Assembly: GCA_002269645.1 (NCBI GenBank)
Contig: NIVC01002755.1
Coordinates: 79,150 to 143,149, forward strand
Source of the DNA: Macrostomum lignano
Taxonomy: Eukaryota
Reading direction: 5' to 3'
Length of the DNA: 64,000 nt
Below, piece after piece: positions 39,659-62,480 of this stretch; positions within the stretch are counted from its first letter, which is position 1, and the number at the start of each line of letters is the position of its first letter. Under the pieces are notes generated by a model. The model ran no database searches, was not told where the DNA came from, and worked only from the letters and a program-made list of their open reading frames with translations. Both the position numbers and the translations under genes were made by a program.

Positions 39659-42600
39659 ATGTCCGACTGGCTCGCACCGGGGGCAGCGGGCGGCTCAGCC
39701 AGCAGCCCGCTACTGCCCACCACCTTCGGAGTTGGCGGTGTCAGCAGCGGCCTCGGCGCGGGCGTCGTCGACCACTTTGACATTCTCGATAGCGCCGGTG
39801 GCAGCGGCGGTGTTATTGGAGACGGCTGCCTCCTGATGGATGACGTCGGCCTCGGCGACGAGCCCGAAGTCCTCGGGTTGGAGGCGGCCGCTCTGCCAGC
39901 CGTGGAGGCCTCGGAGAACCAGTGCCTGCTGAGCGAGGAGCTGTACAGACTGTCCAGAGTGCGCCGCGTCTGGAAGAAGGAGAGCCTGGAGCTCTGGGCG
40001 CTGAAGGATGACGCCGGCTACGTGCTGGAGAGCCGAGGCGGCGTCTTCAGTCAGCAGTTTCAGCGAGCTCAGGTGCGCTCGGTTAGTCTGTTATTACCTG
40101 AGGCAGCTTAGTTGGTTTGTCGCAGGGTGGCTATTGGGTTCCGTCATAAATTTATGCGAAAGTTGAGTTGAAAGAAGTTCTGCACATCTTGCTGACCCCT
40201 GAGCACGCACAGCGGCCAGGCGTTACCGGTATATTACAAAAACAAGGGCCAGAGGAGGCGTTGACCCTCATCAGTATGAATCGTATGACTGTTCGGGAGC
40301 CTCAGATTAATGTGACCGCTCTCGAAATCGAACCCAGGCAACCCAGAGCGAGAGAGTCGGGCGTGTTACGAGCTACCGCTCCACTGCTCAGCCCCTCTTG
40401 ACAGGTGGTGCACAGGCAGTTTTAAATCTCAGACCCGGTCTTTAACTCAACCAGGTGCGCTCGTGGACGGAGCTGACTGGCGGCGGCGGTGACGGACGCA
40501 GCTCCAACTCGAAGCGCCCCGCTGGCCGCCTGAAGGACCGGCTGGTGTTCGCCGTCCGCTTTATCGCCGACTCGGAGTGCAGCGGCGCCGAGTCGCAACA
40601 GCCGGGGGTCATCGGCGGCGGCGGTGCCAAGTGGCAGCGCTTCCGCGCGGTCTCGGTGCACCAGATGTACCGCTGGATGCTGGTGCTCAGACGCCTGTTT
40701 GACGACCCGACCTGCCCCGAGCCGCGGCCCGGCTCGACTTTGTCTCCCATGGCAACGAGGTTTGCTCTTACACTGCTGTTCAGCAGATTCGTTCCCGATT
40801 TGGCTTGCCCGCTCAATGCCCGCCGACTCGAACTGGGAATTTCTTTTTGCTTGCCTTCACCTGCTGATAGTCCCCTTGGTTTGAATTGACCCGAAGCTTG
40901 TGATTCCCTTAGTTTTAATTCAGCCGAAGCTTGTAATTCCCTTAGTTTTAATTCAGCCGAAGCTTGTAATTCCCTTAGTTTTAATTCAGTCGAAGCTTGT
41001 AATTTCCTTAGTTTTATTTTAGCCGAAGCTTGTAATTCCCTTAGTTTTAATTCAGCCAGAGCTTGTAATTCCCTTAGTTTTAATTCAGCCAGAGCTTGTA
41101 ATTCCCTTAGTTTTAATTCAGCCAAAGCTTGTGATTCCCTTAGTTTAAATTCAGCCGAAGCTTGTAATTCCCTTAGTTTTAATTCAGTCGAAGCTTGTAA
41201 TTTCCTTAGTTTTATTTTAGCCGAAGCTTGTAATTCCCTTAGTTTTAATTCAGCCAAAGCTTGTAATTCCCCAAGTTTTAAAGGTGTTAATTCACCAAAG
41301 GCTTGTAATACCCTTGATTAATTTTACTCAACTCTGGTAATTCCCTTAGTTTAAATTCAATCTCTGGTGACTCACTTCAATCAAACAGTTTCAGTAAATT
41401 TCTTCTTGTCCAAAGCTTCTGCTGTTCTCTCTCTGGTGCACCAGGCCGCACACTTCTGTTGCCTTTGGCTCGCTTCCAGCGGGGCTCGGCCGGAGCCTCC
41501 CTGCCTGCCAACCTGCCTCAAGTGCTGCTAGACGGGGGCGTCCTTCACGGGGTCACCGGTGGGGGGGCATGTTTTCCCTGTCTGTCCGAAACGCCGACCC
41601 CTCGCCCCATCGTCTTAAGCGATTCGCCAACGCCCGGCCGCGCCGCCCACTTTCCAACAATAATTTATAGTTCGCTTATTCGCGAGCCGCCGGCTTGGCT
41701 AATTAAAAAATCTGCTGTTGCGGACTGCCGGCGGAGGCGCTGCTGGCCGGCGCGGGCCGGTCGTAAACAAACACCGGCCGCTACGCTGGTGGCGATCCGC
41801 TCTGCCGCCGTGTCCGGGTGACCCTCGAGCGACACTTTGTTAGCGGCGAGGGGGGGGGGGTCCGGGGCTGCCCGGGCCTGCCGGAATTTCTGTGGCTCTT
41901 CAATGCGCCCTGCTCTCTTCTGCCTGACTCCCGGGCAGGCAGGCAGGCGATTCCTCAATAGCCTGCCTGCTGCACATATCGGGCCGGGGTCGGATTCCCA
42001 TACCGGCCCTTCTTCCCGCTTTTATTCAAGTGGCTTCGCGTTGGCAGAAAGACCGACTACTCCCTGCTCGTCTCGAGGCGGTTTGATCGGCACTTGGGGA
42101 TTTTTTTAGATATGGCCGCTTCCTCAATGCGGGGAATTCGCCTCTCCGCCCTTCATGAGAAATATTTTGGGAGTGGCCGCTTCCTCAATGTGGGGAATTC
42201 GCCTCTCCGCCCTTCATGAGAAATATTTTGGGAGTGGCCGCTTCCTCAATGTGGGGAATTCGCCTCTCCGCCCTTCATGAGAAATATTTTGGGAGTGGCC
42301 GCTTCCTGAATGCGGGGAATTCGCCTCTCCACCCTTCCTGAGGAATATTTTGGGAGTGGCCGCTTCCTCAATGCGGGGAATTCGCCTCTCCGCCCTTCCT
42401 GAGGGATATTTTGGGAGTGGCCGCTTCCTCAATGCGGGGAATTCGCCTCTCCGCCCTTCATGAGGAATATTTTGGGAGTGGCCGCTTCCTCAATGCGGGG
42501 AATTCGCCTCTCCGCCCTTCATGAGGAATATTTTGGGAGTGGCCGCTTCCTCAATGCGGGGAATTCGCCTCTCCGCCCTTCATGAGGAATATTTTGGGAG

Positions 42601-62480: not shown

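What the first reader, a model, noticed from the sequence alone, without database searches (positions are those of the whole stretch)
39659..62480. About 1500-aa protein fusing PH/PPxY/WW-like modules to a Gly-rich repeat and a domain resembling uncharacterised fungal proteins
Seen: the N-terminal half has a PH-like domain ending in the typical helix (HQMYRWMLVLRRLF), PPSY and a WW-like segment. It continues into GGxGG/Gxy repeats interrupted by short beta-like inserts (LIVISSCG, FHLLLSG, RLLITADNPCLLVLVEADLRGG). A long globular region follows (FFPSAQVVVTNVRLRNRGGMALP; DALFV..FLQWQCLLETLHLDVDFWD.ERYEGFS). From memory, unverified, this Gly-rich plus C-terminal layout resembles a family of uncharacterised fungal proteins (DUF7932-type). 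I know no vertebrate or insect counterpart. Inference: a patchily distributed or horizontally acquired module has been joined to animal membrane-targeting and ubiquitin-ligase-adaptor motifs. This is the best candidate for an undescribed system in the window.
Basis: partly seen in the sequence, partly recalled or inferred. Interest (0 to 1): 0.82.

Follow-up and report, generated by a model that had tools for sequence, protein, structure and literature searches.

The report
Flatworm member of uncharacterised DUF7932 family
This is a real 14-exon flatworm gene for a 1479-residue cytoplasmic protein of the catalogued but unstudied DUF7932 family; its whole domain layout is shared with other worms, so it is not a new fusion or a recent horizontal transfer.

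Summary
The DNA is from Macrostomum lignano or a very close relative. The protein is 1218/1227 identical to GenBank PAA71730.1, named "DUF7932 domain-containing protein" in UniRef.

Pfam DUF7932 is met once exons 7-9 are spliced (38.8 bits, cut-off 27). The N-terminal domain is PH-like and the "WW-like" stretch is a divergent WW domain, but both are shown only by family profiles. Six blocks with glycine at every third residue (65 triplets) are modelled at pLDDT above 90 with no helix or strand. Three beta-sandwiches follow, then a C-terminal domain with no relative in the PDB.

The full layout recurs at 25-35% identity in a nemertean and in about 20 unnamed eukaryotic proteins. Macrostomum groups with trematodes in a rough tree. 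Relatives also occur in an amoebozoan, a liverwort and a giant virus.

The seven frameshifts are one-base homopolymer deletions and are probably assembly errors. Function is unknown. My best guess is a membrane-tethered scaffold. The main residual interest is the glycine-rich module.

The parts
39659..40072 (+). Exon 1 (aa 1-138): start ATG, a low-complexity N-terminus and the first half of the PH-like domain (from about 39920)
   Evidence: ORF and GC3. Donor GTGCGC. The start and the exon 1-2 junction match the contiguous ORF P0002 on Logan contig L002.
40455..40759 (+). Exon 2 (aa 139-240): second half of the PH-like domain with its C-terminal helix HQMYRWMLVLRRLF. The window lacks one C after 40732.
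   Evidence: The frame after 40732 (PRPGLDFVSHGNE) is supported by P0001, P0002, L001 and L006.
43297..43494 (+). Exon 3 (aa 241-306): PPSY motif at 43438-43449
   Evidence: 100% identical to L001.
43713..44143 (+). Exon 4 (aa 307-450): FLPPHGPP motif (43806-43829) and the divergent WW domain (43872-43967). The window lacks one C after 44085.
   Evidence: WW tests.
46976..47084 (+). Exon 5 (aa 451-486): first beta-strand (LIVISS) and first Gly-x-x block
48840..49189 (+). Exon 6 (aa 487-604): Gly-x-x blocks 2-4 and the inserted strands (FHLLLSG and others). The window lacks T after 49027, G after 49071 and G after 49126.
   Evidence: The donor GCG|GTGAGT joins exon 7 in phase 0.
50744..52398 (+). 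NOT part of the gene: a nested, intronless 552-aa Q/H-rich ORF in intron 6, with its own ATG after an in-frame stop and its own stop. The window lacks one C after 51765.
   Evidence: It is called as a separate gene in both Mlig_3_7 copies. No homologue has an insertion at this point.
54453..55097 (+). Exon 7 (aa 605-819): the rest of the glycine-rich module (to about 54833), a beta-hairpin and the start of DUF7932 (from about 54909)
56414..56557 (+). Exon 8 (aa 820-867): middle of DUF7932
   Evidence: The acceptor was chosen by the family alignment and by P0154.
57073..57177 (+). Exon 9 (aa 868-902): end of DUF7932 and start of the second beta-sandwich (VGCTRKV...CVNIE)
   Evidence: Missed at first. 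Found through P0154 and the family alignment.
57649..57965 (+). Exon 10 (aa 903-1008): beta-sandwiches 2 and 3. The window lacks one C after 57806.
58719..59491 (+). Exon 11 (aa 1009-1266): the alpha/beta subdomain with the invariant DxLxVT...VDFWD motifs, a long helix and a beta subdomain. The window lacks one C at 59089/59090.
59882..60106 (+). Exon 12 (aa 1267-1341): start of the C-terminal helical part
   Evidence: 100% identical to L006.
61484..61684 (+). Exon 13 (aa 1342-1408): helical bundle
62265..62480 (+). Exon 14 (aa 1409-1479 plus stop): low-confidence acidic tail

Best explanation
Identity (shown). This is a 14-exon Macrostomum gene for a 1479-aa protein with no signal peptide and no membrane-spanning segment. 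It is a full-length member of the eukaryotic DUF7932 family. It is one of at least three nearly identical genomic copies, and one of those is already in GenBank as PAA71730.1. The order of parts is: PH-like domain; PPSY and FLPPHGPP proline motifs; a WW-derived domain that has lost both signature tryptophans; a glycine-rich module made of six blocks with Gly at every third residue (65 triplets) around a small beta-sheet; three beta-sandwich domains, the first of which is DUF7932; and a C-terminal alpha/beta plus helical domain that is the best-conserved part of the family. Mechanism (inferred, about 0.35). It acts as a peripheral-membrane scaffold. The PH-like head docks on a phosphoinositide-bearing membrane; in relatives a bona fide PH, FYVE or C2 domain may do this job. 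The proline motifs and the WW remnant recruit partners such as NEDD4-type ligases, or fold back on each other. The glycine-rich module folds within one chain into a bundle of polyglycine-II/collagen-like helices. Together with the three beta-sandwiches this bundle forms a rigid stalk that holds out the conserved C-terminal domain as a binding module rather than a catalytic one. The seven frameshifts in the window are homopolymer under-calls of a long-read assembly, not decay of the gene.
For: Gene model. AG/GT borders and phases are consistent, and GC3 is high in the exons. Model aa 253-1479 aligns to P0154 = PAA71730.1 with 1218/1227 identities and no gap. The same layout, with the same neighbours (Exo84 upstream, nested Q/H gene), is seen in L006. 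Family membership. DUF7932 scores 38.8 bits against a cut-off of 27. There are 196 relatives, 31 of them at E<=1e-30. All 42 members scanned contain DUF7932. Conserved full architecture is shown in alignment A1, which includes Lineus longissimus. PH-like domain. The family N-terminal profile's best PDB hits are PH domains: FGD6 at E=0.008, then TIAM2 and PLEKHB2. P0043 has a Pfam PH domain at residues 1-98. WW. hhalign of the family segment against a WW profile gives 96% probability and E=2.7e-9, and 5 of 10 members give sub-threshold Pfam WW hits. Membrane theme. FYVE, PH and C2 domains occur in relatives. Cytoplasmic location. The highest Kyte-Doolittle 19-residue score is 1.42, and the N-terminus is not signal-like. 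Structure. The AF2 model has mean pLDDT 83.4; the glycine-rich stretches reach pLDDT 90-96 with no DSSP helix or strand; three beta-sandwiches follow. Foldseek matches integrin, transglutaminase and adhesin Ig-like repeats. The C-terminal domain model has pLDDT 80.9 and pTM 0.82, with no PDB match at E<=0.001. Frameshifts. All are one-base losses next to an identical base and are intact in both L001 and L006. Substitutions on the window lineage are 10 synonymous to 4 non-synonymous, and 11 to 1 over exons 11-14.
Against: No transcript evidence from this organism was available for the exon junctions. Only the exon 1-2 junction is seen, in a Logan contig of a related species. Pfam PH and WW do not match this sequence on its own. 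The WW remnant lacks both tryptophans, so proline-ligand binding is doubtful. PPxY is present in only about half of the aligned relatives. The polyglycine-II reading rests on high pLDDT without assigned secondary structure, because I could not inspect coordinates. The AF2 models were made on substrings of the 99.3% identical copy P0154, not on the window's own sequence. Several polar residues are invariant in the C-terminal domain (D, T, D-x-W-D, S, H, H), so catalysis is not excluded. The neighbouring Exo84 coding sequence has no such deletions, which leaves some room for a young pseudogene.
Confidence: 0.55

Rival explanations
1. One reading: a patchily distributed or horizontally acquired Gly-rich plus DUF7932 module was fused, in the animal or flatworm lineage, to animal PH/PPxY/WW motifs, creating a new chimeric system.
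For: The named members are taxonomically scattered: flatworms, a nemertean, Mastigamoeba, the liverwort Riccia and a giant virus. Several homologues are intronless among intron-rich neighbours. N-terminal modules differ between distant clades.
Against: The full N-to-C architecture, including the PH-like helix, the Y-x-E motif, F-x-PP-x-GPP and the WW remnant, is collinear in about 20 proteins at 25-35% identity, including Lineus. Macrostomum clusters with four trematodes (63% bootstrap; trematodes 100%). The accessory domains are typical eukaryotic ones. The gene has 13 spliceosomal introns and host-like GC3.
Confidence: 0.06
2. The window copy is a decaying pseudogene, a redundant homeologue of a polyploid genome, and not a functional gene.
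For: It has seven frameshifting one-base deletions in 4.4 kb of coding sequence, plus one in the nested gene, relative to two other copies. The neighbouring Exo84 coding sequence has none.
Against: Every deletion shortens a homopolymer. Copy L001 carries its own, different set of deletions, as expected of long-read consensus errors. Substitutions on the window lineage are 10 synonymous to 4 non-synonymous, and 11 to 1 in exons 11-14. There are no in-frame stops apart from those caused by the shifts. All splice sites are intact.
Confidence: 0.15
3. Two genes: exons 1-4 (PH/PPxY/WW) and exons 5-14 (Gly-rich/DUF7932) are separate transcription units.
For: No cDNA was available. M. lignano uses trans-splicing (my own knowledge). 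The exon 4-5 intron is 2.8 kb.
Against: Gene predictions P0001 and P0154 both cross the exon 4-5 junction. Intronless homologues such as P0007 encode both halves in one uninterrupted ORF. The junction phases match.
Confidence: 0.03
4. The protein is an enzyme. The conserved C-terminal alpha/beta domain (flavodoxin-like, faintly DJ-1-like) is catalytic, and the rest of the protein only targets it.
For: Invariant polar residues in the C-terminal alignment: D26, T31, D55, D58, S66, H75, H106. The best, though weak, Foldseek hits are to DJ-1/PfpI and SIS folds (E=0.05-0.4).
Against: No Foldseek hit reaches E<=0.001 and TM-scores are about 0.3. No Pfam or PDB sequence match was found. The His-Cys pair after strand 3 (YPHC), frequent in relatives, is VPDY here and varies elsewhere.
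Confidence: 0.15
5. It is a secreted collagen-like structural (matrix) protein.
For: It has 65 Gly-x-x triplets. There are sub-threshold Pfam Collagen hits (23 bits against 27.2) and compositional matches to C1q and collagens.
Against: There is no signal peptide or membrane-spanning segment. The protein and its relatives carry intracellular modules: PH-like, WW, FYVE, SH3, SAM, RING. Many triplets are GGx, which is unlike collagen. AF2 models the region confidently as a monomer.
Confidence: 0.03

Closest known systems
Macrostomum lignano PAA71730.1 (BOX15_Mlig001232g1), named 'DUF7932 domain-containing protein' in UniRef (A0A267FD70)
   Same: 1218/1227 identical over aa 253-1479 with no gaps. 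It has the same exon structure, the same nested Q/H-rich gene and the same Exo84 neighbour.
   Different: It is another genomic copy (introns 93-98% identical). The deposited model lacks exons 1-2 and the first 12 residues of exon 3. The window copy has seven one-base deletions.
Pfam PF25560 (DUF7932) family, for example Lineus longissimus XP_064649595.1, the trematode proteins CAL8092621.1 and OON21367.1, Mastigamoeba EP00727_P002144 and Riccia KAL2613924.1
   Same: The DUF7932 beta-sandwich is present in all. In Lineus and about 20 unnamed proteins the whole PH-like/PPxY/WW-like/Gly-rich/DUF7932/C-terminal order is the same.
   Different: Identity is only 25-35%. Macrostomum has long low-complexity insertions in the PH-like domain and has diverged at several family motifs (YPHC is VPDY here, LPNG is LPWG, EVADE is YLSDE). 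Distant members swap the ends for PH, FYVE, C2, SH3, SAM, SPRY, WWE or RING domains. No member has a known function.
Polyglycine-II helix bundles (snow-flea antifreeze protein, Obg N-terminal domain, phage S16 gp38 adhesin tip). This comparison is from my own knowledge and was not tested here.
   Same: Gly at every third residue, often as GGx, in several consecutive blocks. The region is predicted with high confidence but without alpha or beta secondary structure.
   Different: The blocks are much longer (8-14 triplets each). They are embedded in a large intracellular multidomain protein and interleaved with a small beta-sheet. No sequence or Foldseek match to those structures was obtained, and the geometry was not inspected.
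WW domain (PF00397)
   Same: The profile-profile match covers the whole domain at 96% probability. The L-P-x-G start, the aromatic pair, the (D/N)-H and the closing D-P-R are kept.
   Different: The first Trp is aliphatic (Val here) and the second is Tyr, Phe or variable. Pfam WW does not match this sequence and stays below threshold in relatives. Ligand binding is unproven.
Terrestrivirus sp. A0A3G4ZNF8 (giant virus), 'DUF7932 domain-containing protein'
   Same: It is the best BFVD structural match: E=3e-29 over 817 aligned columns, covering the Gly-rich, DUF7932 and C-terminal parts.
   Different: Identity is 18%. It is viral. Its N-terminal architecture was not examined.

Membership tests
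Pfam DUF7932 (PF25560) | Score at or above the curated gathering threshold (27 bits) over most of the 130-position model | tested here: met
   38.8 bits, E=1.5e-9, model positions 4-126 on the spliced exons 7-8. The near-identical P0154 scores 42.6 bits. Exon 7 alone gave 26.9 bits.
DUF7932 full-length architecture group (Lineus-type) | Collinear alignment of the N-terminal PH-like domain, F-x-PP-x-GPP plus WW remnant, Gly-rich module, DUF7932 and C-terminal domain | tested here: met
   Alignment A1 of 21 sequences has invariant and near-invariant columns in every part. The best relatives score E=4e-58 to 1e-40.
PH domain (PF00169) | Pfam match at or above the gathering threshold on this sequence | tested here: not met
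   No Pfam family at E<=1 for aa 1-450.
PH domain (PF00169) | Seven-stranded beta-sandwich capped by a C-terminal helix, with homology detectable by profile | tested here: inconclusive
   Three of the four PDB hits of the family N-terminal profile are PH domains, the best being FGD6 at E=0.008. The distant member P0043 has a Pfam PH domain (39.8 bits) at the same position. No structure model of this part was made.
WW domain (PF00397) | Two conserved tryptophans about 20-22 residues apart and a Pfam match at or above 26.9 bits | tested here: not met
   Both Trp positions are substituted (Val and Tyr). There is no Pfam hit for the window segment, and relatives reach at most 20 bits.
WW domain (PF00397) | Homology to WW domains at profile level | tested here: met
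   hhalign gives 96.2% probability and E=2.7e-9 over 32 columns.
PPxY (PY) motif, a ligand of NEDD4-type WW domains | P-P-x-Y in an accessible region, conserved among orthologues | tested here: inconclusive
   PPSY at aa 288. About half of the aligned relatives keep [PL]PxY at that column; the others keep only Y-x-E/D. Binding was not tested.
Collagen triple helix (PF01391) | Pfam match at or above 27.2 bits, secretion signal, (Gly-X-Y)n rich in Pro | tested here: not met
   23 bits. No signal peptide. Many triplets are GGx.
Polyglycine-II helix bundle | Antiparallel left-handed PGII helices packed through glycine backbones | not testable with these tools
   Only indirect evidence: pLDDT 90-96 with no DSSP secondary structure in the Gly-x-x blocks.
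DJ-1/PfpI (class I glutamine amidotransferase-like) | Nucleophile-elbow Cys and a significant structural match | tested here: not met
   Best Foldseek E=0.05 with TM about 0.3. There is no conserved Cys; the position reads VPDY here.

The most novel reading that the evidence does not exclude
DUF7932 proteins carry a large intracellular bundle of polyglycine-II/collagen-like helices: six blocks and 65 Gly-x-x triplets in this protein. That fold is so far known only from small antifreeze proteins, the Obg N-terminal domain and phage adhesin tips. Here it would be mounted between phosphoinositide-binding heads and an unknown C-terminal effector domain. The family's scattered distribution (spiralian worms, an amoebozoan, a liverwort, intronless copies in other eukaryotes) would owe something to exchange with giant viruses, one of which encodes a full-length relative.
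Probability: 0.3. Interest if true: 0.6.

Novelty: already known. Interest (0 to 1): 0.33.

Why it matters
For this window the matter is settled. It is a correctly recognised gene and a near-identical copy of an already deposited hypothetical protein. It belongs to a catalogued domain family, and there is no evidence for a lineage-specific fusion or a recent horizontal transfer. What remains of interest concerns the family rather than the locus. DUF7932 proteins are large and conserved across distant eukaryotes. No member from a standard model organism appeared among the named hits. No paper in the held library mentions DUF7932. They combine lipid-binding heads with an unusual, confidently modelled glycine-rich module and a C-terminal domain that has no solved relative. 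Macrostomum lignano supports RNAi and transgenesis (my own knowledge), so it would be a practical system for a first functional study.

Tried and rejected
1. The first homology search, with 330 aa of the C-terminal region, found nothing. The word-index search missed relatives that the exhaustive HMMER search later found.
Organism names therefore come only from 30 cluster look-ups.
3. My first gene model had two errors. Exon 8 started at the wrong acceptor (56390 instead of 56414), and the 105-nt exon 9 was missing. Both were corrected from the family alignment and P0154.
4. I considered including the Q/H-rich ORF at 50744-52398 as a large exon and rejected it. It has its own ATG after a stop and its own stop. 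There is no acceptor at its start. The exon 6-7 junction is in phase and continues the Gly repeat. No homologue has an insertion there.
Substrings of the 99.3% identical P0154 were used instead. No model of the N-terminal 450 aa was made.
6. Sequence searches against the PDB with the N-terminal, C-terminal and Gly-rich parts gave nothing significant. NCBIfam gave nothing.
7. The DVLFVT...VDFWD pattern recalled the TIR domain box-1 pattern. I dropped this idea because neither Pfam nor Foldseek returned any TIR.
8. A Foldseek search with the whole 1029-aa model is dominated by Ig-like repeats and says nothing about the Gly-rich part.
9. Literature searches for DUF7932, for Mlig001232 and for a polyglycine-II/PH-domain combination found nothing relevant.
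10. The first tree script timed out. The final tree is only a rough neighbour-joining tree.
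Full report
ORGANISM AND CONTEXT. The window is eukaryotic, and nearly every intron contains a minisatellite. A search with the N-terminal exons returned Macrostomum lignano BOX15_Mlig010679g1 at 94% identity (P0001) and a 62% identical ORF from a Logan contig (P0002). 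Two contigs of the M. lignano assembly GCA_002269645.1 are collinear with the window at 93-98% identity: NIVC01005180.1 = L001 and NIVC01001143.1 = L006. The window is therefore M. lignano or a very close relative, and it is a further copy of a locus present at least three times. Its neighbours are a TRPM channel, a MINDY-3/4 deubiquitinase, an alpha-galactosidase A-type gene, Exo84 and a Mos1-type transposase fragment.

GENE MODEL. Third-position GC marks the coding segments. Splice-site scans and reading of the junctions gave a first model. That model was corrected with the family alignment and the deposited protein P0154: exon 8 starts at 56414, and a 105-nt exon lies at 57073-57177. The final model has 14 exons, all with AG/GT borders, and encodes 1479 aa:
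- exon 1, 39659-40072
- exon 2, 40455-40759
- exon 3, 43297-43494
- exon 4, 43713-44143
- exon 5, 46976-47084
- exon 6, 48840-49189
- exon 7, 54453-55097
- exon 8, 56414-56557
- exon 9, 57073-57177
- exon 10, 57649-57965
- exon 11, 58719-59491
- exon 12, 59882-60106
- exon 13, 61484-61684
- exon 14, 62265-62480

Residues 253-1479 align to P0154 (PAA71730.1, 1227 aa) with 1218 identities and no gap. The exon 1-2 junction matches the contiguous ORF of P0002 on a 1073-nt Logan contig that lacks the 382-nt intron.

THE Q/H-RICH ORF. The ORF at 50744-52398 starts at an ATG directly after an in-frame stop and ends at its own stop. There is no acceptor at its start. Exon 6 ends ...GGNGGA|GTGAGT and exon 7 begins cag|GGNGGCGG, both in phase 0, so the glycine repeat continues across the junction. 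No homologue has an insertion at that point. Both Mlig_3_7 copies annotate this ORF as a separate gene of 550-553 aa. It is a nested gene and not part of the protein.

FRAMESHIFTS. Relative to both L001 and L006, the window lacks one base after 40732, 44085, 49027, 49071, 49126, 57806 and 59089/59090. It also lacks one after 51765, inside the nested gene. Each missing base sits next to an identical base. L001 has its own, different one-base deletions. Substitutions assigned to the window lineage are 10 synonymous to 4 non-synonymous in exons 1-10. In exons 11-14, compared with L006, they are 11 to 1. This pattern fits long-read consensus errors in a gene under purifying selection. The Exo84 coding sequence shows no such deletions, so I keep 0.15 for a young pseudogene copy.

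FAMILY. Exon 7 alone scored 26.9 bits on Pfam DUF7932. The spliced exons score 38.8 bits against a cut-off of 27. The exhaustive HMMER search with the C-terminal 722 aa found 196 proteins at E<=0.001 and 31 at E<=1e-30.

Cluster look-ups named the following members:
- M. lignano copies
- the trematodes Calicophoron daubneyi, Opisthorchis viverrini, Dicrocoelium dendriticum and Fasciola hepatica
- the nemertean Lineus longissimus (XP_064649595.1)
- the amoebozoan Mastigamoeba balamuthi
- the liverwort Riccia fluitans

Most other hits are unnamed ENA, JGI or Logan proteins. Three that I inspected lie on eukaryotic contigs among intron-split neighbours (peptidase M16, vault protein, ribophorin II), yet they are themselves single uninterrupted ORFs. 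One of them has a tandem paralogue. This set is biased towards intronless genes because of how those contigs were annotated.

The 21-sequence alignment A1 shows that the whole protein is collinear with these relatives at 24-32% identity, not only its second half. The shared parts are the N-terminal domain with its closing helix, a Y-x-E motif (PPxY in about half of the sequences), F-x-PP-x-GPP, the WW-like segment, the glycine blocks, DUF7932 and the long C-terminal domain. All 42 members scanned carry DUF7932. Some also carry FYVE (3 members), PH (2), C2, SH3, SAM, SPRY, WWE, RING or WW domains. A rough neighbour-joining tree places Macrostomum with the four trematodes (63% bootstrap; trematodes 100%). 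The best match among predicted viral structures is a DUF7932 protein of Terrestrivirus, at E=3e-29 over 817 columns.

THE N-TERMINAL HALF. Pfam finds nothing in aa 1-450, and phmmer against the PDB finds nothing. A profile of the family's N-terminal domain hits PH domains in three of its four PDB matches: FGD6 at E=0.008, then TIAM2 and PLEKHB2. The distant member P0043 has a Pfam PH domain at residues 1-98. "PH-like" is therefore reasonable but not proven for this sequence.

The WW-like stretch gives no Pfam hit here. It gives sub-threshold WW hits in 5 of 10 relatives. Both signature tryptophans are replaced, so it is a WW-derived domain of uncertain ligand binding.

STRUCTURE.

Residues corresponding to aa 451-1479 gave mean pLDDT 83.4 and pTM 0.61. 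The Gly-x-x blocks have pLDDT 90-96 but no DSSP helix or strand. They surround a small sheet formed by the inserted strands (LIVIS, FHLLLSG, SLRVSG, AIIFA, RLLITA, LVLVE). The protein has six uninterrupted blocks of 8-14 triplets, 65 triplets in all. A collagen triple helix would not be expected to model confidently as a single chain. I therefore infer an intramolecular bundle of polyglycine-II-type helices, but I could not inspect the coordinates.

Residues 732-1022 form three beta-sandwiches. Foldseek matches them to integrin, transglutaminase and adhesin Ig-like repeats.

The C-terminal domain was modelled separately (pLDDT 80.9, pTM 0.82). It has a flavodoxin-like alpha/beta part, a long helix, a beta subdomain and a helical bundle. 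No PDB chain matches it at E<=0.001; the best are DJ-1 and SIS folds at E=0.05-0.4 with TM about 0.3. Profile and single-sequence searches of the PDB are empty. There is no signal peptide and no membrane-spanning segment.

INTERPRETATION. The identity is secure. This is a full-length member of the DUF7932 family and already exists in GenBank as a hypothetical protein.

For function I commit, at about 0.35, to a peripheral-membrane scaffold:
- a PH-like head, matched in relatives by bona fide PH, FYVE or C2 domains
- proline motifs and a WW remnant for partner recruitment or self-regulation
- a rigid stalk made of the glycine bundle and three beta-sandwiches
- a conserved C-terminal binding domain

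Every one of these steps is inferred from architecture. A catalytic role for the C-terminal domain remains possible (0.15), because several polar residues are invariant.

No paper in the held library mentions DUF7932 or this locus.

VERDICT. As a sequence the gene is already known; its function is not. Interest is modest and attaches to the family's glycine-rich module and its unknown C-terminal domain, not to this locus.

Noticed in passing
window 50744-52398 (+): A nested, intronless 552-aa glutamine/histidine-rich ORF lies on the same strand inside intron 6 of the DUF7932 gene. An AG sits about 10 nt upstream of its ATG, which could be a trans-splice acceptor. It has no Pfam match. It is annotated as a separate gene in both Mlig_3_7 copies.
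   Followed up: partly
BFVD entry A0A3G4ZNF8 (Terrestrivirus sp.), matched by model mdcdbdcf7d481: A giant virus encodes an 1137-aa DUF7932 protein that matches the Gly-rich, DUF7932 and C-terminal regions at E=3e-29 over 817 columns. This may bear on the family's scattered distribution.
   Followed up: no
L003 3001-6861; L004 10001-13723 and 16654-20355; L005 10001-14110: Full-length homologues on unnamed eukaryotic contigs from ENA metagenome assemblies are single uninterrupted ORFs, and one is a tandem pair. Their neighbours (peptidase M16, vault protein, ribophorin II) are split into many small exons. The organisms were not identified.
   Followed up: partly
window 40732, 44085, 49027, 49071, 49126, 51765, 57806, 59090: There are eight one-base homopolymer deletions relative to two other genomic copies, all inside coding sequence. 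The neighbouring Exo84 coding sequence has none. This is probably assembly error concentrated in G/C-rich runs.
   Followed up: yes
window 1-39000: The neighbouring genes are a TRPM-type channel (about 1-11000, +), a MINDY-3/4 deubiquitinase (24031-24795, -), an alpha-galactosidase A/GH27 gene (28200-30272, -), Exo84 (33434-36242, -) and a Mos1-type transposase HTH fragment (36847-37128, +).
   Followed up: partly
whole window, e.g. 8983-10326, 42113-43142, 45033-46010, 53254-54201: Almost every intron holds a long minisatellite or microsatellite array; 63 Tandem Repeats Finder rows score 200 or more. These arrays create many spurious long ORFs in several frames.
   Followed up: no
L001 1887-2214 versus window 40518: Copy L001 carries a 25-nt tandem duplication inside exon 2 plus several one-base deletions. 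This explains why its deposited protein P0001 starts only at MYRWMLV.
   Followed up: partly
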